DNA of 57,781 nucleotides, counting the filler, from Platydemus manokwari (taxonomy: Eukaryota): NCBI GenBank assembly GCA_037951405.1. It is 5 parts of 5 records of this genome, joined end to end, with 100 filler letters (N's around TTAATTAATTAA, not from the genome) between each part and the next. Parts side by side here need not be neighbours in the genome. Positions count along the whole stretch, not along the records: positions 43,683 to 57,781 come from JBBMOY011533634.1; 4 more parts are not named here. One strand, 5' to 3'. How positions within the stretch are numbered: the stretch's first letter is position 1; each line of letters begins with the position of its first letter. Both the position numbers and the translations under genes were made by a program. Shown here piece by piece: positions 43,245 through 57,781 of this stretch. The notes under the pieces were generated by a model. It was not told the origin of the DNA. It made no database searches and saw only the letters and a program-made list of their open reading frames with translations.

Positions 43245-44028
43245 AATTTTTCCAAAGCGTATTTTACAAAATAGTTTCTGCTAGCAAATGCGCTTGATGG
43301 AATCTTGAAAACTCATCGACAACAATTTATATGTTAGAGATCAAATGACATTTCATAAACATTCTAAAGAACGATTTTTAATTATACAAAATTAAAGATC
43401 GTATAACTGACAAATATCTCGTAAAATCGATATTATTATTATTATTATTATTATTTATATATTTGTAAAAACTGCTTATATCCCACATCTATTGATCTGC
43501 ATTATCTTATTTCCTGAGAGAGATAATAAAATATGAAATTAGTTTGTTTACATTTATGTATTCACAGATTAGATTTCTATAGNNNNNNNNNNNNNNNNNN
43601 NNNNNNNNNNNNNNNNNNNNNNNNNNTTAATTAATTAANNNNNNNNNNNNNNNNNNNNNNNNNNNNNNNNNNNNNNNNNNNNAAATATTTTTAAAGAATA
43701 TAATTAAATAAACTATATAGAATTTTGCAATACACTCAACAAATTTAAAATTTCATTTCTTGACTTTAACTCAAAAATAGAAATGAATGGAATAATTATC
43801 AAATACTCTACTACTCTTTTCAATAAGTAGTTTCAATTCAATAATGCAGATATATTAGCTAGACATCCATCTGATCCAATTCATCAACACTTCAATGACT
43901 CCCCACCTCTATCAAAATTATCAATAAAATTCATCGCACAATAATAAATGCTGAGAATTTTTGTGAAATATTTTCAAATCAATCAATTTGAATTCAAATC
44001 AATATCAATCTATATAATCAATCAATAC

Positions 44029-47000
44029 CTGAGATGATGCATTGACAAATTCTTCCTTTTTCATATGAGCCAAGTTCTGTAATCGAACGGATTCCTTATA
44101 AATGGCGCTATCTTCAACATTAAACTGTTGGGCATTATTGAATACAAGATCCATGTCATTCAATGTTTGATCGATATCTTGATAGAGATTTTTCTATGAA
44201 ACAATTCATTAATCAATTATCGTCCAATTGATTCAAACAACTTTTATTTTAGCTTTCACCATTAGAAGAGACATCGGTTCAAGAATCTCGAGATAATAAT
44301 CAGGATACATTCTGTGACAAATCAATACAAATCGATAATAATACTAATAATGATAATAATAATACTAATAATAGTGATAATACTAATAATAATGATAATA
44401 CTAATAATGATAATACTAATCATAATGATAATACTAATAATAATGATAATACTAATCATAATGATAATACTACTACTAATAATAATAATGATAATAATAA
44501 TATCAAATCAATAACTTTTTAGATGGTAACTTCATGAATGGAGCACAGAGATTGTTGCCATTGTTGAGAGTGATGCTTGTAATGGCTTTATAAAGCTGCC
44601 ATTGTGGATAACGATTATCACTAACGGGAATTTGAAGATCTTCATCAATTTCAACACAACTTTCCAATGTATCATCTTGTTCTTCACTGTCAAATTCATC
44701 ACTATCCTTAGGTGATTCCATTTTAGCATATTTATCCGTAATGTTTAAAGGTATCTTCCTTTTACGACCTCTGCTAATAATTATCAAATATCCATATCGA
44801 AACCATCTAATATGATATCACCTTCGAGGTTTTTGATTTTTAACTCCAGTCTCAATTTCTGTTCGTTTGGATTTGATAATTTTTTGTAATTCTACGGCAT
44901 GCTAAATTCAATTTGACATGTCATTATACATATATTTCTCTCCTATCACCCATTATACCATACCTGGAAAACTTCTGATTTGGGCTCGTTGAAAACTTTG
45001 GCATTTTTTATCATCAATTGAAAATCTCGTTCTATATCATCGATGGTCAAATAAACGCCAGATTTTATTCGTTTCGCTATTATTCTCAGATCAATCGGTT
45101 CTTTAATGATTTCCAAATATTGTGGGTACGCCTAACATGGAAATATTTTATTATTTAATCAAATGGATTGGGAATCATGAGATACGTTTAAAGTAACACA
45201 ATTCAAAACAATATCAGCCTCCTTAAAATAGGAAATAACTTAAAGCCAAATGCACAAATCATAATCTAAATTAGAAATTAAGCATATTTTCATAATTATC
45301 TATTATGGTATCATTATCAAGATTGAAATAATTAATTAATTATAATTTTAATTAATGGATCAACTGAAGAATCTCACCATAGACTTGCTCAGGTGGGAGA
45401 TTCTTCAATTGCACATATTCAATAAATCTATTGTGCTTTAAACATCTACTTATATTAAATCTCGTTTGTTTTAGTTTAATTAATTTTAAATACTCTAATT
45501 TATTCAAGACATACTTCTTTCTTTACTTTATCAGTTTTCAATTGGTTAAAACGCCACAACCTTTTAGCAAGTGAGCTAAATTGCACAGATTGTGGTCAAG
45601 AAATGAATTTTTACACTCATACATTTTGCAATATCCTCAATAAATAAATTTGATTAATATTTGACTTATTTTGATTATTTTTTATTATTTTTGGGTGGAG
45701 ATTCTTCAATTGATCCTAATTAATTAATATAATTTTAATTAATTATAATTATAAGTTATAATTAATTTATAAATGTTCAATATTTAATTTCGATTATATC
45801 GATATTCCTTATGACTTATTCAATTGTTTATCTAAACTGATTTGATAATTTGAAATCAATCAATACATTTTATTGATTTTCTGGAAATTAATGGAATAAA
45901 ACATTTTAATAAAAGATATTTTATTTTTGAAATATCGCATTTTCAAAAATAAAAATCTAGTAAATTCTTATCGTACGAATTTTCAAACAGGAAAATCTTT
46001 ACAGTTTTTATTTGCTATGGGAATTTGCTTATATAAAGAACATGTCCAGAAAAGTCTGTAGGTCTTAAAATTGAGCTTAGAAATCATAGCAATGGTGAAT
46101 AGGGTTTTGCAAAAACTTTGAAATCAGCCTTGAATAACGAAAACTTTGTAATCGCATGCTGAAATTTCATTTTTCATCGAGATGGGTTTAAAAAGACCCC
46201 CCCCCCAAAGCACATATTTAATATAAAACCCCATCTAAAGGACTTAATAAATATAATTTAATTTATACTGATTTTACTAGTTCCCCAGTATATCCATAGC
46301 TTTACCATTTAAATTAAAGGTTTTTAATCAAGATATAGCGAACCCCACCAATCACATCTATCAAAATAACCTTGTAATATTTTCAATCAAATTTAAGGAT
46401 TGCTTTTATAAAAATTAAGATTTTATTTTTCTTGCCATAAAAATCCCAAAATCAATAATTTTCATAACTTACACTGGAACCAGTAAATCATATATGATAA
46501 TCAAAATATTGCATCAGATCTAATAATAATGATGACAGAATGATGATATCGAATGATAATTGACAGAATATTGTCACTGAATTTATTCAATCATTGGTCA
46601 ACACACATCTAATCAAATCAGGAGTCTGATTGATGTGATTATTATATCAGTTCAAGAATGCCTCGAAACAGCCAACACCAGTAACGAGTTCTTATTTCAC
46701 GCATTATTTCCACAATTAAACATCTCAATTCAGTGTGACCTCTATTTTGTGAGGTCGATTATTAATTTTTAATTTATTTAGGCCACCATTCATCAATAAG
46801 TCGAAGCTTTACGATATTTATCAAGAAAAATTAAAATTAATTTCTTTTAATAAAAAAAAACTAGTTAAAAATTCTTAATAATATCAAAAAATAATAAAAA
46901 ATCGATTTTATAAATAATGAAAAAATTGTCTTTAAATTTTCATTAGGCTTAGTTTTATGGTAAAAAATTACATTTCTCGATGGTAAATATGTGAATGTTG

Positions 47001-47788
47001 GAGCCAGATCTTTACCATCTTCCGTTTTCTGGCTGACAACCGACGTAAAATAGGCTTCGAGAGGATTTTCCGAATAATTGCTGCTGATCTCCGACGTGTT
47101 TCGAGAATCATCTGATGTCGATAAAGATATTTGATCACTCATACCATCATCAATTGAAATTGCTATTCGTTTCCTTCCTCGTCTCGAACGACCTTCGGCA
47201 CCTACAATGAATAACATGCCAATTTTAAACTTTTGCTGTCGAACTTATGTTACTGCTTTCAGCTTTAGCGTCGGCCTTTATGGCAATGTTTCGTTTTTCT
47301 TGTTCAAATGCGTTAGATAATAAAATCGAATCCTGGTATTCTAAAGACGAAGGAGAATGGTAAGTTTTAGCATTTTCCATTAACTGTTCGATATCTATTT
47401 GAAAATCGTAAAACGTTTCATATTCATCATTTTTGATTCGTGATTGGATTTTAATAATATCAATGGGTGTCTCGATCACATCATAATAATCCGAAGCTGT
47501 ACGCTTATTCGGTAATCTGATAAATGAGTCTGCAATTAGATGCCCGTCATCGGCTTTAGCATTTCGTAACTTGTCCAAGATTTCTTGACAATGTGTAACC
47601 TATTAGAAGTGAGAAGTAGTACCAACTAAATTTTTTACAATTACTTCTAATCTAGAATCAATTGTTTTTCGTCTTTTCCTAGTGGAAATAGTACTAGATG
47701 CAGATTGAATAGAATCTTCATTGTAATCTGTAATTGATACACTTTCGTCACTTATACTTGAACTTCGTCTACTTCTTTTGAATGGCAT
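44029..47788 (-). CDS. PBRM1: Polybromo-1 / BAF180 (PBAF subunit), 5' part with bromodomains 1-3; runs toward the gap at 43583
   Basis: In-frame GT-AG exons 47788-47645, 47599-47254, 47201-46972, 45131-44964, 44901-44822, 44773-44516, 44311-44242 and 44193-44029. Three tandem bromodomains: FIRLPNKRTASDYYDVIETPID, LPSRNAYPQYLEIIKEPIDL...NAKVFNEPKS, FMKLPSKKMYPDYYLEILEPMSL...NAQQFNVEDS. Confidence 0.92.
44333..44500. repeat. Compound (ATA/CTA/ATG)n trinucleotide microsatellite in a PBRM1 intron
   Basis: Directly visible. Similar simple repeats at about 9080-9165, 18355-18383 (TG)n and 30005-30080. Confidence 0.9.
45357..45716 (+). mobile_element. Merlin (IS1016/ISXO2-like) deletion derivative in PBRM1 intron 3
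   Basis: TIRs GGATCAACTGAAGAATCTCACC / GGATCAATTGAAGAATCTCCACC and a perfect 8-bp TSD TAATTAAT. Extra inverted TIR copy at about 45393-45411. Internal NWLKRHNLLASELNCTDCGQEM resembles the Merlin transposase N-terminal Zn finger. Confidence 0.75.
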
Positions 47789-49609
47789 TTATTAACCTAT
47801 AAAATAAAATAGAACAATGAATTACAAAACTACAACAAATAATTAAAATTAATTAATCGCCATTTATTATTTAATGTACATTTTTAAATTAACAAAAAAT
47901 TCTTTTAACATATCTAAACAAATCGTATAAATGTAAAGGTTATTCATAAAAATTAAAGTTTTGGCTTAGTTACGTTAGCTTTTGTAAAAAATTAAAATGT
48001 AAAATCTTTTAAATATTTATTGTGAATTAATCATAGATTTCTCAGAATAATCTTGAATTTTTTCATAATTCAATAAATTCAATATTTATAATTAATTTTG
48101 ATATCTTTATTTTTTATATTTAATTAAACATCCTCAAAATTTGGAAACAATTTTTGAATGGATTCAAAGTTATTAGGATTTTTAAAATGTAAATCTCGCA
48201 TTACGTGGTAAATCAATTGTAAAAAAAGCCTTGTGAATAAGTTTAATTTAGATAGTGAAAAAATAAGTCATAGATTTAACCCAATAATAATTAAGAAAGG
48301 ATGTATAAACATACTAGTATAAATAGAGTGCTAATATTGAGTAAGTTTTACGAAGACTAGATGAAAAGTTATCTGAATTAATAATAGGTAATTTTAAATG
48401 AATTTAAAAGGACTGATTTTATTTGATAGACAATTTATATAACAACAATTGTGTAAATCTTAATACTTATTTCCAAATTGTAATGAATACTAAGACAGTC
48501 TAGATTACAGTAATATATTAGTATAAATTCTATATTTAGTAAATTTTCTGGAACACTTTAAAAGCACCAGTAATCACGGTAAGTCCCTTACCTCATCTCT
48601 TTTTAAAAGTCTAATATTTTCATTTTATACATTGAATTTCAAGTTCAGATAAGAGGCAAAATAAACAAGGTAGTTTAGGAAGAATTAAAAGCTTTTTCTA
48701 GAGGTTCCGATAACAACACTGTCATCTCCATAAGCTAAGGCCCACAAGAAAAGAGATAGATCAAGTTTCAAGGTTACTTGAAATTAATGAAAATGAAGCT
48801 CTCAAAATTGTTTAATATGATTATTGAATTCTAAATTTAGCGACTTTTAATATTGACAAATAATAAATTAACACTACTAACTGTTTTCAGCAACTAAGGC
48901 TGATTGAGGAATTTTTTAAAGCATTCGTTAGTTCTTCAAGAATTATTGGTTTGAAGTAAGAGTTGTTTTTGAATCTCATTAGGTTGGGGAAAAGCTAGTA
49001 GACTTGGGTGCAGAGTGGGGATAGTAAATTGATGTTAAAGTGATAGTAAAGCAATAATTGCAGGTTAAGATGGAACAGCAGGAATTACTTGAGCAATTAC
49101 AAGTTCTATTAATCAAGTAAGATAACCTAAAGAACATATTTTAAAACATGAAAAGTGAAAGAAGTATTAAAGCAGCTAAAATATAGTGTAGGAACTACTA
49201 AAAATAGATATAATGATAATGCTGCGAATTGACAAAATCAACAACGTAACAATCATTTTGACAAATAATTCGAGCATAATAATAACTTATGTGGAACAGT
49301 TTTGGTTGACTTAACAATTTCGAAACATTTGCTGAATTTTGTGCATAATTTGTAAACATTTATGCAACAATTCTTATTGTAACAATTTCTATTTTTGTAA
49401 AAGTTACAATTTTACCTTCTGAAAGCTGGAACGAATATTTTTAAATGGTTATTTTATTCTTTATAACTTCTGGACAAATTAATAATAAATAATAATGATA
49501 ATGTGAACACGGTTAATAGGTTTAAGAAAAATTATAATATTTATAATATTTCAAGGATTTAATAGTATAAAATATCTGAATGGTTTATAATTTCTAATAT
49601 CAATTTGCA

Positions 49610-50156
49610 GTAGGAATCTTACTTATTAAATTTAAAGTTAAGGACCTTCTGAATAAAATAAATTGTATCGAATTTAACCAAACAGTAGAACAATTAAAAC
49701 CCGTTTCTAAAATCGTATAAATAGAGGGTCAAACATCAGAACCTTGCCCATTGTCTAGAAATCACTAAGCTCATTAGTTAACTGAAACCACTAGAGAAGT
49801 CTATCTTTCATATTTATCAGAAGCCATTCATATTTGCCTTGTAAAACTGTTTAGAATAGGCATCAATTGGTGCAGTAGTAAGAATTAAAATAAACACTAA
49901 CTGGTGCTCGAATTGTTACGAATAGTGAAGTTTGAAAAATTGAAAAATTAAAGTTACAAATCGCTAAATTAGTGAAATTAGAAATCGTTGGGATACGAAT
50001 AGATAAGGCAAACGAAGTTGATAAATAAAAACCAAGGAGCTATCGATAAATTTAATTTGAGAGAAGGAACTATTGATAAATTTATTTTGAGCCAAGATGG
50101 TATTATTTACAAATTGAAATTGAGCCAGACAGATTTTGATAAATTAGATAATTAAT
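49610..50156 (+). pseudogene. Decayed ORF ending in ~10-aa tandem repeats (QGAIDKFNLR-EGTIDKFILS-QDGIIYKLKLS-QTDFDK)
   Basis: About 30-bp tandem repeat at about 50030-50150 that keeps the frame. The upstream frame is interrupted by stops. Identity unknown. Confidence 0.3.
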
Positions 50157-50370
50157 GCGGGCTTGATAATTCATGGCGTGAACCGGAGAGCTAGTTTAGC
50201 GACGCATTATAAGTAACTTCGGTACAGATGCTAATAAAACCTAATTTATAATATTTTATTATTAGCTGAGAAGTTGTAAATTTATATAAAATGAAAAATT
50301 AAATTTATTACTCTGAAATATGTTTTAGGGTTTGAAAATAAAATTCAACTGAAAACGAAAATATATTTCT

Positions 50371-50660
50371 GATAATACAACAATAAATATTGAATGTTCA
50401 TTTGCAAAATGGAAGTATTGTTTCGGATACAAATCATGATATACAAAAAGTTCAGTTACCATTCTTGACTTTTCAGTGTTTCACCTTTTTATCAATGCGT
50501 TGAACTAGTAAACCAATCAATTTATTTTCTATTGACAACAAAATATATCGGAGAGATTACATTTAAAATTACTAATCAAAATAATAATTTAATTGATTTT
50601 AGTTTTCAAGAAATATATTGTGGAGCCACCTTCAAATCATCCGAGTCACTTGAGCAATAA
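50371..50660 (+). pseudogene. Polinton/adintovirus minor capsid protein (penton, PX) C-terminal relic
   Basis: Frameshifted translation INIECSFA/NGSIV.../VSPFYQCVELVNQSIYFLLTTKYIGEITFKITNQNNNLIDFSFQEIYCGATFK, matching the PX pattern I.C.L..GS..../V.PGY...E.P....Y.P.....I..I...ITDQ....IDF..E.I.....LK. Confidence 0.65.
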
Positions 50661-50999
50661 AGGAAGGATGAACAGCAAGAATAAAAAAATTTTGAAATAA
50701 AATAAGAACAAAAGTAAAATTTTAAAAAAATATACATAAAATTTGTTTAATTGTATAAATTATCTCATTGACTTCAAGGTTATCGGAAAATTCAACCAAG
50801 ATGTAAACGTTGAAATCACATCATGTCTAAAAAAGAATAACCACAAATAATATAATATAAATTGTTGAGTTTTGAAATTTTTGGCAATAGAAAACTGCAA
50901 TAATCAGACAATAATGGTGTGTATCACTCTGCAATCTTTTATTACATGTATAAAAGTATTTCATTCATGAAAAAATAATGAATAACATTTATATGTGAA

Positions 51000-52100
51000 T
51001 TCAGAGAAATTATACGATCAACTGAAATAGAACATAATTTGTTATAATTAAAACCCCAATTAATAATCCCCATAATTAATAAAAATCCGATATTAATATG
51101 AACAAATTAAACCCATTAAAATTACCATGTAATAAATTCACTCATTAAAACAATGCGCATAGTGAATTTGTCGTTGGAATAAACAAACAGAATGAATTAT
51201 AGAGCACATCAAATAAATATCCAGCTAGAATAAAATGATAGCCACGCATTTAATCGCAGATAATTTATCTCTGTTATAGTGGAATTAATTGCAGAGAATT
51301 TCTTACTGTCCCAATAAATTCCGATACGATAAAAATATACCCTGCATTAAATAAGACTTGTAGAGAATGTCTAAGAATGACTCACCGCTGCCTATATAGG
51401 GCAATGGCTGCAATAATTATATGCAAGATTGTTACATAAAACCCAGAAAGCTAAATTCAAGATCATTTACTGTCGAGATTAGGATTAGAAAATGCCCATC
51501 ATTTCTATTGGAAGAACAAACATTAAGAATATGCATTTAAATTCATATATTAGTATATATCGCATATTCTTCGTATCTATACAGTGTAACTCAAATTACT
51601 TGAAATAGACACTTCCCCAATATCACGAAGTGGTTTCTTGGTCTACGATCTTCTACCCTGAATTGTACATAAATCCTTCATTTATGTGTATATAAGTAGA
51701 ACTAAAATAATTTAATTGTATGAAAGTATTAAATTCTTAACATTTTGTTGTAAAGAATATTTTTTGCTAAAATTAGTTCTGATATTCATTTAGCATTTAG
51801 CTTTCATAGGATTCATAAATTCACCATTAAATTTTTCAATATAACTCTCACTACCTTTTTGAAGTTGTCCAGGTGCATTATTAAATCTGTTAAAGATTGT
51901 CGAAGTGGTTTTATAGTAATTATAAATTCAAATTACAAATGTACAATTTGTAAACTCTATAACTAATACTATAATGATTATCAGAAGGATTTTAATCAAT
52001 AATTATATTGACTCAAAAATCTTCAACTTATCTGGACTCCAAACAGATAAGAGGTTGTGGTCGCTTGATCACTCGTTTAATATAATAAAAATAATATTTA
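51000..52100 (-). repeat. Unclassified interspersed repeat family, copy C
   Basis: Homologous to copies A and B. The decayed ORF reads QKG...NIRTNFSKKY...TYIHINEGFMYNSG...IDTKNMRYILIY. Confidence 0.6.
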
Positions 52101-53977
52101 AAGGTATAAATGATAATGTACTAAAATGCAATGAATAAAAGTAAAATAGAACAAAATAAAATGTATTGACGATCAAAATTAATAATCTGAGTACAATAAA
52201 TTTTAATTATATAAAGCGGTGTTCGCTATTGTGGGAGCAAAGAGTGTAAGTCAAAAAAACAGTAAAGGGCGTACCGCTTAGGTGCTCAGGTAAGCTTCTT
52301 GTGACAGAAATGAAGGTGGGGATCTTTAAGTGTAACTTATAGATTTTAGAAGATCACAAGGCTAAAACTAGTCGTGAGTCGAGTTTTAATTAAACAGTGA
52401 ACAAATCTACTTGTAGGATGCATAATAAAATTCTTTAAAATCTGTGGATCAAAATTGGCATGTAATTATATAATAGCTTCGGAATTGAGCTTCGTCAAAA
52501 TTTTCCTACAATTTTATATTGAGTCGAAATCGTGATAAGTCAAAGTGAGATGATTGTTTGTTGCTCTCTGCTTTTGTACTACTTTGTGGATTATTATGAG
52601 TTATGTATCTTTGTTGCTATTTTTGGTATTATTCAATGCTTAGTAGCATATGTTACTAATTTTAGTATATGTACAGCATATGTAACTATTTTTAGTTCTA
52701 GTTTATATTAAATTTTGTTTATATGTTGCGCGTGGTTGTTGATTTATTATTGAATGATGGTTCGTTTTTATTTAATTATTTGGCGCGATTTAACCTAAAC
52801 TCACTGGTCCTAAAGGGGCTTCAACAACTGGTATTGGAGACCAAGCTGTTGGAAATCAAATTTAATATGTTGCGTTCAGATTGTAGCACAGAGAATGCGT
52901 TGTCTCTCTGGGCCTAGAATGATATGAGATTCAAAATTAATTTGATATGTGAAGTTTACAATAATTCGAATCGTTAATAATTATAATTGTAGTGAGAATA
53001 AAACTTGTGTTTTCAAAAATATTTATTTAAGAAAATGAGGATAACAATTAATATGAAAAATGAACACAAAAATTTGAGCTAATATCTCGTACCTCGCCTC
53101 AGCGATTAACGAGTAATCCGGTATACGGACGGAGATTGTTACTGATACGGAGAGAAGATGTAATTTATAGAGTCAATAAATTCATATAACTTTAATTATG
53201 TTCATGCTATTAAAATTATGATTAAATTAAGTTATTAGACAAATGAATGATAAAATTGTGCAGACAAAAGCTGAAACCTTACTGTGCTTGTAGTGGCACT
53301 CTGCGGAATTCCAATATATATAAGAAAAATCCTCGGACAGCTGTCGATTGTTTCGAATATCTGCTTATCAAAATCCAAATGCGATGTCGTCGACAATATA
53401 GCTTCTATAATTTTCTTTCTGCAAAGAGTTATTCAAACCAGCTGCGCGTGTATGACAATTAACCTGTATCCGCCTTACAAAGATCACAAATGTCGATAAT
53501 TTTGAAATATGTCAATGATGATTAAATCAGCGTTTTTTTTCGGCTATTCTGTTTTCTCGCACTTCTGATTTTTTGTGGTTTCAGTCGTGTTGTGTGGTTT
53601 TTATTGTGGTGGTGCTATGATCAACGTCGTTATTTAAGAATCATAAATAAAATACAATTTATATAAATGATAATAAAACGCTAATGTTTATTACTAGAAT
53701 AAAAGTAAACGACCAAAGCAAAAGCCAATGTTTATTAATTAGAGCAATTAATTAGTTATTGATCACGTTAATCAGTTATGGATCACGATCGTCACGATAA
53801 TTGCATTGTTGGCACAATTGACTGTTATTGTTGATGGGATTCAATATTTGTTTTATCGACAGCAGGTCAGTCCACACTCAGGTTCAATGTATATTTTTAA
53901 GGGTATAACATATGTACAGATATTAGCAGGGTGTATATGTTTATAGGATGTTTGTAGAGTGCGTGTTAGAAGAGCAT

Positions 53978-54110
53978 TGTATGTTAGAAGGATATTTATA
54001 TTAGTAGGGATTTTGAGTAAATGTATGTTAAAAAAGGTATTTATATTAGTAGGGATTTTGAGTAAATATGTTTGTAGGGAGTTTGAGGGTGTATAGAGTG
54101 AGGGTGTATA
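53978..54110. repeat. 44-45 bp tandem repeat (2 copies plus partial) and a doubled GAGGGTGTATA; candidate Polinton subterminal/TIR sequence
   Basis: TGTATGTTA...TATTTATATTAGTAGGGATTTTGAGTAAA at 53978-54021 and 54022-54066. Confidence 0.7.
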
Positions 54111-54114
54111 CCCA

Positions 54115-56135
54115 ACAAAACGAATCTAAAATTCTTGAATCTTTCAAGCTAAAGCCTAAGAAAATTTTTACCTTTATGATTATATAAGGGGGAATAATTT
54201 TAGAGAAGTAGATTCTCTATTAATGAGAGAAAATAATGTAAATAATAATATTTCTATTAAACATGCATCCTTCTTTTCAAGCATAGATCAATGTGGAATT
54301 TCGGATGATGATTATGAAATTTTTAAAAATGATTTTATAAATTTGAAAGAAAACATGCTGGTTTACATGAAAACAGATGTATTATTTTTAACATATTTCT
54401 TTGAGAAATTCAGAGATACCTGCTTGGATCATTATGGGATAGATCCTGCCTATTGTTATAATACAACCGGATTATCATGGCAACTGGTTTAAAATATTCA
54501 AAAGTTAAACTAAAATATTTTAAACCAGAAAAATATAATCAATTATTATTAATCGAGAAAGGAATTCATGTAGGAATAAGTTTAGTTCATGGAAATAGAA
54601 AAGTCATTTCAAATAATGGAATAACAAATAAAAATTTTTGATAATTATTATGAACCAGAAAAACACGAATGGGATCAAATAATTAATAATTTTAAAAAAA
54701 GGTAATTCTAACATGTCGCATTATTTTAAGGAAAAAGTGTCTAAATATTATAATGCTAATTCCTTATATGCAACATGTATGTGTTCACCACTACCAACGG
54801 GTGAAATTGAAGAAGTCGATACTATATATGAAAGGACAACTTATGATGAAGAGGGATTTATTTATAAGGTTAATATGGATTATCCAAAAGAAATTCATAA
54901 CAAAACCAAATATTTACCGCTTTGTCCGGAGAAATTTAAAGTTAATGATAAACTATTATCAGACTTTCAGTTAAACAATAGATCTAATGTTCTAAAAGAT
55001 GGAACTGGGGTTTATTCAGAAAAATTAATGTTAAATAAATTTAATAAAAAAGATTATATAGTAGAAGGTTCTCTCTTAGATTATTTCTTAGATCAGTGAA
55101 TGATTTTAACAAAGGTTCACAAAAAACTTAAGTTAAAAAAATCCAGATGGCTAGAGGGCTATATTATGCACAATACAGAGCAAAGAACTCTAGCTAAGAA
55201 GAGAGGGGACAAGTTTGGGGAGGAATTCTTTAAACTTTTAAATAATTCCTTTTATGGAAAAACGTAAGAAGACGTTAGGAAAAGATTGAATATTTCTATC
55301 CTTTCATAAGATAGAGAATTTCAATTGCTAACGTCTAAAATGACGTTTAAAAGGGCAAAGATATTCTCCCCACAAATAGCAGCACTTCATATGAAAAAAC
55401 CCACGATAAAGTTTGATAAATTTAATTATGTGTGTTTTTTCATTCTGGAATATTCTAAATTAATTATGTATAAATTTGTTTATGATATTTTAGATAAATT
55501 ATTTAAGGATAAATATAAGATCCATTTCGGAGACATCGGCAGTTTATTTATCGAATTTATTTTGGATTTTAATGAAACATGGTAAGATGTAGAGGATAAA
55601 TTAAAACCATATATAGGAAATGATTAAGGAATGTTCAAAGATGAAGTTCCTAATGAAACTATGAAAACTCAATATTTTATCTTATTTACAACAAAATGAA
55701 GTTGATTATGATAAAATATTAGTAGAACAACCTACAGGAAAAATATTAGATGATTTTAAGAACAAAATGAATGGCTGTAGGAATTATAATAGAAAACAAT
55801 TAAAAATATTAATAGATGATTATAAAAAAACATTAAATCCAGAAATAAAAAATATTTTAAAAAATACTATAATAACATTATTTAATGAAATAATAAACGA
55901 ATATAATAGGGCGTTAACTGAGAACATAAGAACAGTTAACCGTGGCTTAAGGTCTAATCTTCATAAAATTGAAGTTTACGAACAGGAAAAAATAGGACTA
56001 TCACCATTTTACGATAAGAGACTTATCGAAAATTATGGGATATTGACCTGGCCACAAGGTCATCAAATAAAATGTGGTGTATGTGGTGAATGGGTTCTAA
56101 AGCTAGAACAAATAAAAGGAACTCATAATTGTTGA
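54115..56135 (+). pseudogene. Protein-primed family B DNA polymerase (pPolB) of Polinton type, 5'-truncated, with stops and frameshifts
   Basis: VYMKTDVLFLTYFFEKFRDTCLDHYGIDPAY (exoIII region), YNANSLYATCM..PLPTG (motif A), FKLLNNSFYGKT (motif B), IHFGDIGSLF (decayed YxDTDS), GMFKDE, KIGLSPFYDKR. Confidence 0.93.
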
Positions 56136-56308
56136 TAAACTTTGTTAATTACATTGTTAAAATCTTTGTGATGACATTGTTGAGAAAGTTTGTTAATTAA
56201 GAAAGTTCGTTATTTAGATATTTAGTTTACGTTGTATTTATTTAGATAATTAGATTGAAGATGGTGGGATAAAAACTAAACATTGGTCTAACCACTGTAA
56301 ATAATTAT

Positions 56309-56820
56309 TTATAATCTCTGTCTCTTTAACATATTCACTTTAAAAATTTTTGCTTTTAATATTTGATTATTTATCATTTTTAAAATAATTTTATTACCTT
56401 TTCCTATGTATTCTCTAGCTTCTAACGGTTGAAGATTTCTCCAATTGAAACATTGATAAATATTTTGTTCCTTTGTTAAATCAAATTTAGTTACAAGTAA
56501 AACTTGATCAATTTCCCAATAACTTCTATAATTATCCCAAGACATATTTTAATTTAATTGATATTCTATCTATCTTTCTAATTTATCAATTGAACAACCT
56601 AAATATTGCACTGATTTATAAGATTTATTATCAATTAAAGAATTTCGAATATTATTTGATATACTTTTTCTAAATTTATATTGTGGATCAGATTGGTATC
56701 TATTGTTCTGGTATTCAACTTGTTTTTTGTGAAGACATGATTTACATTGATTTCTAACAGGGTAAAAGTCATAAATATTTTTAATACATAAACAATAAGT
56801 ACGTTCTTTATAACTTTTTA
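56309..56820 (-). pseudogene. HNH/endonuclease VII-like nuclease with N-terminal Cys cluster (phage/NCLDV type)
   Basis: A single frame with two premature stops: ...RNQCKSC...YQSDPQYKFRKSISNNIRNSL...YLGCSIDKLER*IEYQLN*NMSWDNYRSYWEIDQVLLVTKFDLTKEQNIYQCFNWRNLQPLEAREYIGKGNK. Confidence 0.8.
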
Positions 56821-56882
56821 AACTCGCTTTAAATCAAACCTTTATTTAAAACACAACTAATATTATTCTCCCCTGTCTTTGT

Positions 56883-57517
56883 TCAGAAAAATTTCTTATC
56901 CATCCCTTCGGTAAAAATAGTAACATTATTTGGTTTTCTTAGATCAAGGAAAGAAGCTTTCAATATTTTAATATAATTAGTATTTGTAGGATTATACCAT
57001 TTTGTTCTAATTCCCCAAGTTTTTTCTCTATCATCCCTATAAATTCTGCTTCTGTTTTTCCTTTTATGAATTTCAAATTTTTAAATTTTTCTGATATTAA
57101 TGTTATTTCTTTTTCATTTATTTTTTTATTATTATTTACCAGTGTAATTATTGATTTACATAAAAAATCAATTTTATTAATAGAATTTTCAATACTCTGT
57201 TTGTTTTCTTTTCAAATCCTCAAGTTTTTATTAAATTTTTTATTAGTTTCACCAATTTCTTTTTTAATTTTATCAACTTCAAATTTTAATTCATCCCTAA
57301 TTTTTTCAAGATATTTCATATTAACAGCATCTGTTTCATTTTCAGGATCACCCAGGTTTGTTATTTTATAATTGTTTAACTCTAAATTACCCTTCATACT
57401 ATCACCCCCATTATTAATATATTTTCTATCATAAATCCGTTCTTTAGTAAAAAGCATGTCTTGAACATCTATCATATTGTTTACTGAACTACTATCAAAC
57501 TTATGAACCATAGACAT
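56883..57517 (-). pseudogene. Polinton accessory gene with fibre/adhesin neck-like motif followed by coiled coil (intact ORF 57212-57517, probable frameshifted continuation)
   Basis: GGDSMKGNLELNNYKITNLGDPENETDAVNMKYL followed by heptad-rich EKIRDELKFEVDKIKKEIGETNKK. Confidence 0.55.
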
Positions 57518-57543
57518 TCTTTATAAATATTTGCAGATATTTT

Positions 57544-57780
57544 TTAGTGTAAAATTCGTTGAAGTATTCGTTGAAGTTGATTTGTCATATTATAAATAAT
57601 ATAATCAAATCTTAATCCTTTATCTCAACAATATAAAACATACATAGATAATTGTCCACATAAGTTTCCTTCGGTTTGTATTTGAATTTTATTATAGGTT
57701 AGTTTGTCTTTATGAAGAAAATTATAAACTTCTTTAGTTGGTAAAATTCCATAAGGATCGAAATAAATGTTATGAGATCG
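57544..57780 (-). pseudogene. Adenain-like (C5) cysteine maturation protease of Polinton, C-terminal half; absent from the ORF track
   Basis: RSHNIYFDPYGILPTKEVYNFLHKDKLTYNKIQIQTEGNLCGQLSMYVLYC*DKG, matching YFD.(F/Y)G..P..E...YN..Q.Q....CG with catalytic Asp, oxyanion Gln and Cys. The catalytic His would lie outside the window. Confidence 0.82.
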
Positions 57781-57781
57781 G

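What the first reader, a model, noticed from the sequence alone, without database searches (positions are those of the whole stretch)
53900..57781. Endogenous Polinton/Maverick (adintovirus-like) virus fossil with replication and virion-morphogenesis genes
Seen: an intronless, tightly packed cluster in an otherwise intron-rich genome, with pPolB on the plus strand converging on a minus-strand run of protease, fibre-like gene and HNH nuclease. Established: pPolB together with an adenain protease and a penton is diagnostic of Polintons/adintoviruses. Inference: this compact-genome invertebrate was infected by a virion-forming polintovirus with an unusual accessory set (stand-alone HNH nuclease plus a neck-motif fibre), which may be an undescribed lineage. 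All core genes carry stops, so this copy is inactive.
Basis: partly seen in the sequence, partly recalled or inferred. Interest (0 to 1): 0.8.

Follow-up and report, generated by a model that had tools for sequence, protein, structure and literature searches.

The report
Decayed Polinton-like virus fragment in animal genome
The last 3.7 kb of this piece is a dead, truncated remnant of a Polinton/Maverick-type virus-like element lying next to an ordinary animal gene: half a DNA polymerase gene, a nuclease gene, a fibre gene and a possible protease tail. It is an ordinary kind of genomic fossil, with a slightly unusual set of accessory genes.

Summary
[quoted passage not shown] The best match in 1.8 billion proteins has E = 4e-33, and tblastn of that same protein against the piece gives 2.6e-116. 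On the - strand, converging on it, lie three things. The first is an HNH/endonuclease-VII-like gene (E = 1e-29 to an unnamed relative whose family matches PHROG 1035). The second is a short fibre-like gene with the neck motif of phage tail fibres (PHROG 2710, 2.4e-9). The third is a 78-codon tail, cut by the piece's edge, that looks like a cysteine protease by eye only; no tool supports it.

All genes are broken. The polymerase has at least three frameshifts and at least six stops, and it lacks its whole N-terminal half. Integrase, capsid, penton, ATPase and terminal repeats are not in the piece.

Polymerase relatives occur as multi-copy genes in a spider mite, a sea spider, an octocoral and an alga. 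In the alga the relative lies beside an rve integrase, which is the Polinton signature.

Verdict: a degraded fragment of a Polinton/Maverick-class element, so a new member of a known kind. The "undescribed lineage" idea is possible but untested. Low to moderate interest.

The parts
54097..56135 (+). [quoted passage not shown] The gene is broken: at least three frameshifts and at least six in-frame stops. Its N-terminal half is absent.
   Evidence: The big search with one 128-aa piece found 563 proteins at E<=1e-3, best 4.3e-33. The hits are Pfam DNA_pol_B_2. tblastn of the hits back on the piece matched the + strand only, in three frames, corresponding to residues ~616-1210 of a 1228-aa relative and 142-747 of a 777-aa relative. 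Four pieces taken apart each match 34-118 relatives, and 13 of 56 strongly conserved columns differ in the window. The window's own Pfam hit is weak (E = 0.004).
56250..56926 (-). Free-standing HNH / 'endonuclease VII'-like (His-Me finger type) nuclease gene. It is broken: at least one frameshift and at least three in-frame stops. The upper bound is uncertain.
   Evidence: The word search found P0162 at E = 1.2e-29 (74-76% identity) and three more relatives near 50%. tblastn against phages gave 3e-11 and weaker hits, one of them annotated as endonuclease VII in Pseudomonas phage PS-1. The relatives match PHROG 1035 'endonuclease VII' at 1e-8 to 1e-24. There was no Pfam, NCBIfam or PDB hit. The window differs at 3 of 15 and 4 of 25 columns that are invariant in the relatives.
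56960..57517 (-). Short fibre-like gene of about 185 codons: an N-terminal part, a 'neck' motif shared with phage tail fibres and trimeric adhesins, then a K/E/N-rich stretch. It carries at least one in-frame stop. No head domain was recognised.
   Evidence: PHROG 2710 tail fiber protein at 2.4e-9, plus 19 further PHROGs that are mostly tail fibre families. Klebsiella phage tailspike adaptor at 3e-4. PDB matches to VompD (0.0035) and to phage fibre proteins (0.03-0.6). Pfam YadA_stalk (0.007) and Phage_T7_tail (0.11), both below cut-off. The word search was blank.
57544..57781 (-). 3' tail of a gene cut off by the edge of the piece. It may be the C-terminal part of a cysteine protease, with probably one in-frame stop.
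   Evidence: This rests on reading the translation. The order of an acidic residue, a Gln and a Cys recalls clan CE (adenain/Ulp1-like) proteases from memory, which is a lead and not a test. There was no hit in Pfam at E<=10, PHROGs, NCBIfam or the PDB.
53890..54096 (.). Boundary zone at the left limit of polymerase homology. It is made of short G/T-rich repeats and includes a 45-bp tandem duplication at 53978-54067. It is not a recognisable terminal inverted repeat.
   Evidence: Tandem repeat and direct repeat D4. The sequence was read. No inverted partner lies within the piece.

Best explanation
This is a dead, left-truncated fragment of an integrated Polinton/Maverick-class (polintovirus or adintovirus-like) element in the nuclear genome of an AT-rich invertebrate.

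Shown:
- It holds the C-terminal half of the element's protein-primed DNA polymerase.
- On the other strand it holds an HNH/endonuclease-VII-like gene, a short fibre-like gene and the cut-off tail of a further gene.
- All four are disabled by stops, two of them also by frameshifts.
- The polymerase lacks its N-terminal half.

Inferred for the living ancestor:
- The polymerase copied a linear genome by protein priming.
- The fibre formed a trimeric spike attached through its N-terminal part and neck.
- The nuclease was a selfish homing-type or DNA-processing accessory gene.
- The tail gene was the capsid maturation protease.

The fragment does nothing today, and nothing suggests that the host uses it.
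For: - The polymerase piece finds 563 relatives (best E = 4.3e-33), many of them 1100-1300 residues long and matched at ~750-900.
- Those relatives are Pfam DNA_pol_B_2, several with an upstream Endonuclease_7 domain.
- They carry names from Tetranychus urticae, Nymphon striatum, Paramuricea clavata and Heterosigma akashiwo. Some form clusters of 10-39 members on megabase contigs, as mobile elements do.
- The Heterosigma relative lies 1.4 kb from an rve integrase and close to a free-standing GIY-YIG nuclease.
- tblastn shows collinear matches in three frames with stops.
- Conserved columns are eroded: 13 of 56 in the polymerase and 3-4 of 15-25 in the nuclease.
- The genes are tightly packed and converge.
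- GC is 21-27%, like the host flank.
- A host bromodomain gene with introns lies on the same piece.
- Published Polintons and related viruses include tail-fibre-like genes and HNH additions (PMC10748475, PMC8502044).
Against: - None of the other defining Polinton genes (rve integrase, double jelly-roll capsid, penton, packaging ATPase) and no terminal inverted repeat is in the piece.
- The protease reading has no tool support.
- Pfam DNA_pol_B_2 does not by itself separate Polinton polymerases from those of linear plasmids, bidnaviruses or adenoviruses.
- The fibre-like and nuclease genes have their named relatives in bacteriophages, so they might not belong to the same element as the polymerase.
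- The gene order of the closest relatives was not examined (step referred).
Confidence: 0.75

Rival explanations
1. It is a remnant of a different pPolB-bearing mid-size DNA virus: a polinton-like virus, a virophage-like virus or another 'MELD' virus. Such a virus need not carry an rve integrase or adenovirus-like virion genes, and here it was integrated by accident or by another recombinase.
For: Only the polymerase links the fragment to Polintons. Fibre genes are reported mainly in non-animal MELD viruses and in oomycete Polintons (PMC8502044, PMC10748475). No integrase lies in the piece.
Against: The one relative whose surroundings could be read lies beside an rve integrase. Relatives are multi-copy in animal nuclear genomes, as Polintons are.
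Confidence: 0.12
2. It is two unrelated insertions side by side. One is a truncated Polinton polymerase. The other is a separate block of fibre-like and HNH-like genes of bacteriophage origin, acquired by horizontal transfer, for example from a symbiont's prophage.
For: The fibre-like and HNH-like pieces have their only named matches in phages. No relative of either was found in the Heterosigma element.
Against: The spacing is tight and the arrangement convergent. The AT content is equally low (21-27% GC) and the degree of decay is similar. A further virus-like gene tail lies on the same strand. Nuclease and fibre accessories have precedent in Polintons (PMC10748475).
Confidence: 0.08
3. It is an assembly chimera or contaminant: virus-like DNA from an associated organism wrongly joined to host sequence.
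For: The junction zone at 52200-54096 differs in composition from both flanks and ends in short repeats. Several relatives in public data carry bacterial bin labels that look like mis-binning.
Against: The genes are heavily decayed, as expected of old germline insertions and not of a replicating contaminant. Their base composition matches the host flank.
Confidence: 0.03
4. It is an endogenous bidnavirus-like element or an organellar linear-plasmid remnant, both of which also carry pPolB.
For: Pfam DNA_pol_B_2 covers those groups too. One distant relative is labelled 'NS1' in Nymphon striatum.
Against: No parvovirus-type NS1 or capsid, and no phage-type RNA polymerase, gave a family hit among the ORFs scanned. 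The flank is a nuclear gene with introns. The full-length relatives are 1100-1300 residues long with an Endonuclease_7 domain, and in one case lie beside an integrase.
Confidence: 0.02

Closest known systems
Polinton/Maverick elements (polintoviruses; adintoviruses in animals)
   Same: A protein-primed family B polymerase of the same sequence family. The relatives are multi-copy in animal and protist nuclear genomes and, in one case, lie next to an rve integrase. The genes are compact and intron-free. The fragment is integrated and decayed, like many endogenous copies.
   Different: Only a 3.7-kb fragment is seen. There is no integrase, capsid, penton, ATPase or terminal repeat in the piece, and the protease is unverified. 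It carries a free-standing HNH/endonuclease-VII-like gene and a phage-type neck-motif fibre gene, which are not part of the usual core set.
pPolB2-type Polintons of oomycetes, nematodes and molluscs (Jeong et al. 2023, PMC10748475)
   Same: Those Polintons have nuclease additions (an HNH or VSR domain inside the polymerase), and the oomycete ones have a tail-fibre-like gene. Full-length relatives of the window's polymerase likewise carry a His-Me-type (Pfam Endonuclease_7) domain upstream of the polymerase domain.
   Different: Here the nuclease is a separate gene on the other strand. It has no detectable similarity to the domain inside the relatives' polymerases. The part of the polymerase that would hold such a domain is missing. 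Whether this polymerase belongs to the pPolB2 clade was not tested.
Phage 'endonuclease VII' family, PHROG 1035 (for example the Pseudomonas phage PS-1 gene next to the small terminase)
   Same: The C-terminal 50-65 residues align at 34-46% identity. The window's closest relatives match the PHROG profile.
   Different: The window copy itself scores below threshold. It differs at several columns that are invariant in the relatives and is broken. It lies in a eukaryotic virus-like element and not beside a terminase.
Phage tail fibre / tailspike adaptor N-terminal region and the necks of trimeric autotransporter adhesins
   Same: A ~35-50-residue neck motif matches PHROG 2710 (2.4e-9), a Klebsiella phage tailspike adaptor (3e-4) and the solved VompD adhesin fragment (0.0035).
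   Different: It is only about 185 codons long, with no recognisable receptor-binding or enzymatic head domain. It shows no similarity beyond the motif, and no relative was found by the word search.

Membership tests
Polinton/Maverick (polintovirus, adintovirus-like) element | [quoted passage not shown] | tested here: met
   Only the C-terminal ~600 residues are present, and they are broken.
Polinton/Maverick (polintovirus, adintovirus-like) element | Retrovirus-like rve integrase | tested here: inconclusive
   No ORF piece in 43683-57781 gave an rve hit. The element runs off the right edge and is truncated on the left. A relative's polymerase in Heterosigma does lie beside an rve gene.
Polinton/Maverick (polintovirus, adintovirus-like) element | Adenain-like (clan CE) cysteine maturation protease | tested here: inconclusive
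   Only a cut-off tail is present. Pfam, PHROGs, NCBIfam and the PDB were all blank. The resemblance is by eye and from memory only.
Polinton/Maverick (polintovirus, adintovirus-like) element | Double jelly-roll major capsid protein, penton protein and FtsK/A32-type packaging ATPase | tested here: inconclusive
   None was found in the piece. The space between the polymerase and the edge is filled by the nuclease, fibre and tail genes. They may lie beyond the edge.
Polinton/Maverick (polintovirus, adintovirus-like) element | Terminal inverted repeats and a 6-bp target-site duplication | not testable with these tools
   The left end is a truncation inside the polymerase gene and the right end is outside the piece. 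No long inverted repeat lies within the piece.
HNH / His-Me finger nucleases (PHROG 1035 'endonuclease VII') | Sequence membership in the family | tested here: met
   The link is indirect. The window piece matches P0162-P0165 (E = 1.2e-29 to 1.3e-8) and phage genes. Those match PHROG 1035. The window piece itself only reaches 0.09 on PHROG 28061.
HNH / His-Me finger nucleases (PHROG 1035 'endonuclease VII') | Intact catalytic motif and beta-beta-alpha-metal fold | tested here: not met
   The window differs at 3 of 15 and 4 of 25 columns that are invariant in the relatives, and the gene is broken. The fold could not be checked: the model of relative P0162 had pLDDT 47. There was no Pfam HNH or PDB hit.
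Phage-type trimeric fibre | Neck or adaptor motif followed by a shaft | tested here: met
   for the motif. The shaft-like K/E/N-rich stretch is read and is an inference.
Phage-type trimeric fibre | C-terminal receptor-binding or enzymatic head | tested here: not met
   No family hit lies downstream of the motif, and the reading frame is only about 185 codons long.
Bidnavirus-like or linear-plasmid pPolB elements | Parvovirus-type NS1 and capsid, or a phage-type RNA polymerase and an organellar setting | tested here: not met
   No such family hit was found among the scanned ORFs. A nuclear gene with introns lies on the same piece.

The most novel reading that the evidence does not exclude
The fragment may come from a lineage of animal Polinton-type viruses that has not been described. 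In that lineage a phage-type neck-motif fibre and a free-standing endonuclease-VII-like nuclease would be regular parts of the genome, lying between the polymerase and the protease. That would point to fibre-mediated attachment in an animal polintovirus, and to gene exchange with tailed phages.
Probability: 0.3. Interest if true: 0.45.

Novelty: new member of a known kind. Interest (0 to 1): 0.25.

Why it matters
Endogenous Polinton/Maverick remnants are common in invertebrate genomes, so the fragment itself adds little. If the gene order seen here recurs in other copies, it would add an animal-associated lineage with a phage-like fibre and a stand-alone nuclease to the known accessory genes of these elements. 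That bears on how such viruses attach to cells and how they trade genes with phages. For annotating this genome, the practical point is that 54.1-57.8 kb is a decayed mobile-element fragment and holds no host genes.

Tried and rejected
**Searches that gave little or nothing**
- Pfam on ten and then four ORF pieces gave only a weak DNA_pol_B_2 hit (0.004). The nuclease and the protease tail gave nothing.
- NCBIfam gave nothing useful.
- PDB sequence searches with four pieces, and with a profile of the nuclease relatives, were blank.
- The word search with the 128-aa polymerase piece was blank and so was the one with the fibre piece. Its length window excludes full-length relatives.
- The AlphaFold model of the nuclease relative P0162 came from a five-row alignment. 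Its pLDDT was 47, so it was unusable and no fold search was made.
- The N-terminal part of the nuclease found nothing in phages.
- tRNA and Rfam scans of the piece found nothing.
- The repeat search found no terminal inverted repeat.
- A search for the missing polymerase N-terminus anywhere in the piece found nothing.
- The window's fibre, nuclease and protease pieces found nothing in the Heterosigma element.

**Readings considered and rejected**
- A variant genetic code in which the stops are sense codons. The host exons read through in the standard code, and the polymerase also needs frameshifts.
- A fibre-nuclease fusion protein. The two share a frame, but relatives of the nuclease are stand-alone proteins.

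- To build references for 'pieces apart' I worked out, in my working, piece bounds that coincide with breaks. The tool calls carry them. They are not repeated here.
- In my working I also recalled motif patterns of polymerases, clan CE proteases and HNH nucleases from memory. None of them was used as a query or as evidence.
Full report
**Setting**

The piece 43683-57781 is AT-rich, about 27% GC, with little variation. Its left part holds an animal gene on the minus strand. Three separate exons between 44008 and 47578 each match the Pfam Bromodomain family, at E = 7.8e-18, 1.3e-14 and 6e-4. They read through in the standard genetic code and are separated by introns. About 6 kb without any convincing reading frame follows. 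No tRNA and no Rfam family is present.

**The polymerase**

Translating the + strand of 53500-56200 in three frames shows polymerase-like stretches spread over all three frames. Taken alone, the window's pieces barely register in family libraries: Pfam DNA_pol_B_2 at E = 0.004 on one 55-residue piece and a PHROG DNA polymerase at 0.026. PDB sequence searches were blank. So was the word search, because of its length limit.

The exhaustive search with the 128-residue piece then gave 563 proteins at E<=1e-3, the best at 4.3e-33. Many are 1100-1300 residues long and are matched at about residues 750-900. Five of eight hits tested reach Pfam DNA_pol_B_2 (E = 1e-15 to 1e-21), and five of the eight carry a Pfam Endonuclease_7 domain upstream of the polymerase region.

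- **Extent.** Run back against the piece with tblastn, the hits match only the + strand between 54097 and 56063. The matches are collinear, in three frames, and correspond to residues ~616-1210 of a 1228-residue relative and 142-747 of a 777-residue one. The reading frame runs on to 56135.
- **Missing half.** Nothing in the piece matches the first ~600 residues of the relatives. The gene has therefore lost its N-terminal half.
- **Breaks.** What remains has at least three frameshifts and at least six in-frame stops.
- **Erosion.** It differs from its relatives at 13 of 56 strongly conserved columns.
- **Closest relatives.** The nearest proteins are 53% (P0001) and 45% (P0167) identical.

**What kind of polymerase**

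Names attached to the relatives come from Tetranychus urticae, Nymphon striatum, Paramuricea clavata and Heterosigma akashiwo. Two further names are bacterial bin labels that are probably mis-binned. Several clusters have 10-39 members on megabase-scale contigs, the pattern of a repeated mobile element.

I looked up surroundings only for the algal relative, since that is not a virus of animals, people or crops. There the polymerase lies 1.4 kb downstream of an rve integrase gene and near a free-standing GIY-YIG nuclease ORF. A polymerase paired with an rve integrase is the defining pair of Polintons. This supports the Polinton reading and argues against a linear plasmid, but it rests on one distant relative (about 34% identity).

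**The minus-strand genes**

Translations of 56100-57781 show three readings in a row.

- **Nuclease.** The 78-residue piece matches an unnamed 128-residue protein at E = 1.2e-29 (74-76% identity) and three others near 50%. It also matches phage genes (best 3e-11), one of them annotated as endonuclease VII and placed next to the small terminase gene of Pseudomonas phage PS-1. The relatives fall in PHROG 1035 'endonuclease VII', at 1e-8 to 1e-24. Pfam, NCBIfam and the PDB do not cover the family. The window copy has at least one frameshift and three stops and departs from its relatives at 3-4 invariant columns. A structure model of the relative was too poor to use.
- **Fibre.** The 101-residue piece matches PHROG 2710 'tail fiber protein' at 2.4e-9, along with many other tail fibre PHROGs. 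It also matches a Klebsiella phage tailspike adaptor at 3e-4 and, weakly, solved adhesin necks and phage fibres. Only a neck motif of ~35-50 residues is shared. The rest of the ~185-codon frame is K/E/N-rich and has no recognisable head domain. It carries at least one stop.
- **Protease-like tail.** Only the last 78 codons are visible before the piece ends. No library recognises them. The order of a few residues recalls clan CE proteases, but that is memory and not a test.

The fibre and the nuclease share a reading frame. I take that as chance, because the nuclease's relatives are stand-alone proteins.

**Left boundary**

Homology to polymerases stops near 54100. Upstream lies a zone of short G/T-rich repeats with a 45-bp tandem duplication. 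Before it, 52200-53900 has a composition unlike either flank and gave no family hit. I cannot say whether this is another mobile element, debris, or the terminal region of a deletion derivative.

**Comparison with what is known**

Tail-fibre-like genes are reported in oomycete Polintons, and HNH or VSR nuclease domains inside the pPolB2-type polymerases of oomycete, nematode and mollusc Polintons (PMC10748475). 'Fiber' genes are drawn in related mid-size viruses of non-animal hosts (PMC8502044). A free-standing nuclease of the PHROG 1035 type next to a neck-motif fibre in an animal element was not found in the papers I read. I searched only a few, and absence there is weak evidence.

**Verdict**

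The best explanation is a decayed, truncated fragment of a Polinton/Maverick-class element (confidence about 0.75). It is a new member of a known kind. The accessory genes give it some interest, if they prove to be regular parts of a lineage.

**Limits**

Broken genes were searched piece by piece.
- Two slips in my working are declared under 'tried and rejected'.

Noticed in passing
window 44005-47788, minus strand: A host gene with at least three bromodomain exons separated by introns (a polybromo-like, multi-bromodomain protein). Its apparent first coding exon faces the element across about 6 kb.
   Followed up: partly
window 44335-44502: An ATAATA-type microsatellite with a 36-nt higher-order period, lying inside the host gene region.
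   Followed up: no
window 52200-54096: This stretch has higher GC (0.31-0.32) and G>C, T>A skews unlike both flanks. No ORF in it has a family hit. It ends in a 45-bp tandem duplication exactly where polymerase homology begins. Its origin is unknown: another repeat, or the terminal region of a deletion derivative.
   Followed up: partly
proteins P0019, P0026, P0029, P0030, P0033 (relatives of the polymerase): Full-length relatives carry a Pfam Endonuclease_7 (His-Me finger) domain upstream of the polymerase domain. It shows no detectable similarity to the free-standing nuclease gene in the window.
   Followed up: partly
L003 6270-13384 (Heterosigma akashiwo contig): An algal element with a free-standing GIY-YIG nuclease ORF, an rve integrase and a pPolB in a row on one strand. 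This is a precedent for stand-alone homing-type nucleases in this polymerase lineage.
   Followed up: partly
proteins P0020, P0186, P0187: These polymerase relatives are filed under bacterial metagenome bins (a cyanobacterium, Desulfosporosinus). They are probably mis-binned eukaryotic or viral contigs.
   Followed up: no
L001 10-1297 (Pseudomonas phage PS-1): The phage relative of the nuclease lies directly upstream of the small terminase gene, the arrangement known for HNH proteins that assist DNA packaging. Whether that role carries over to the eukaryotic element is open.
   Followed up: no
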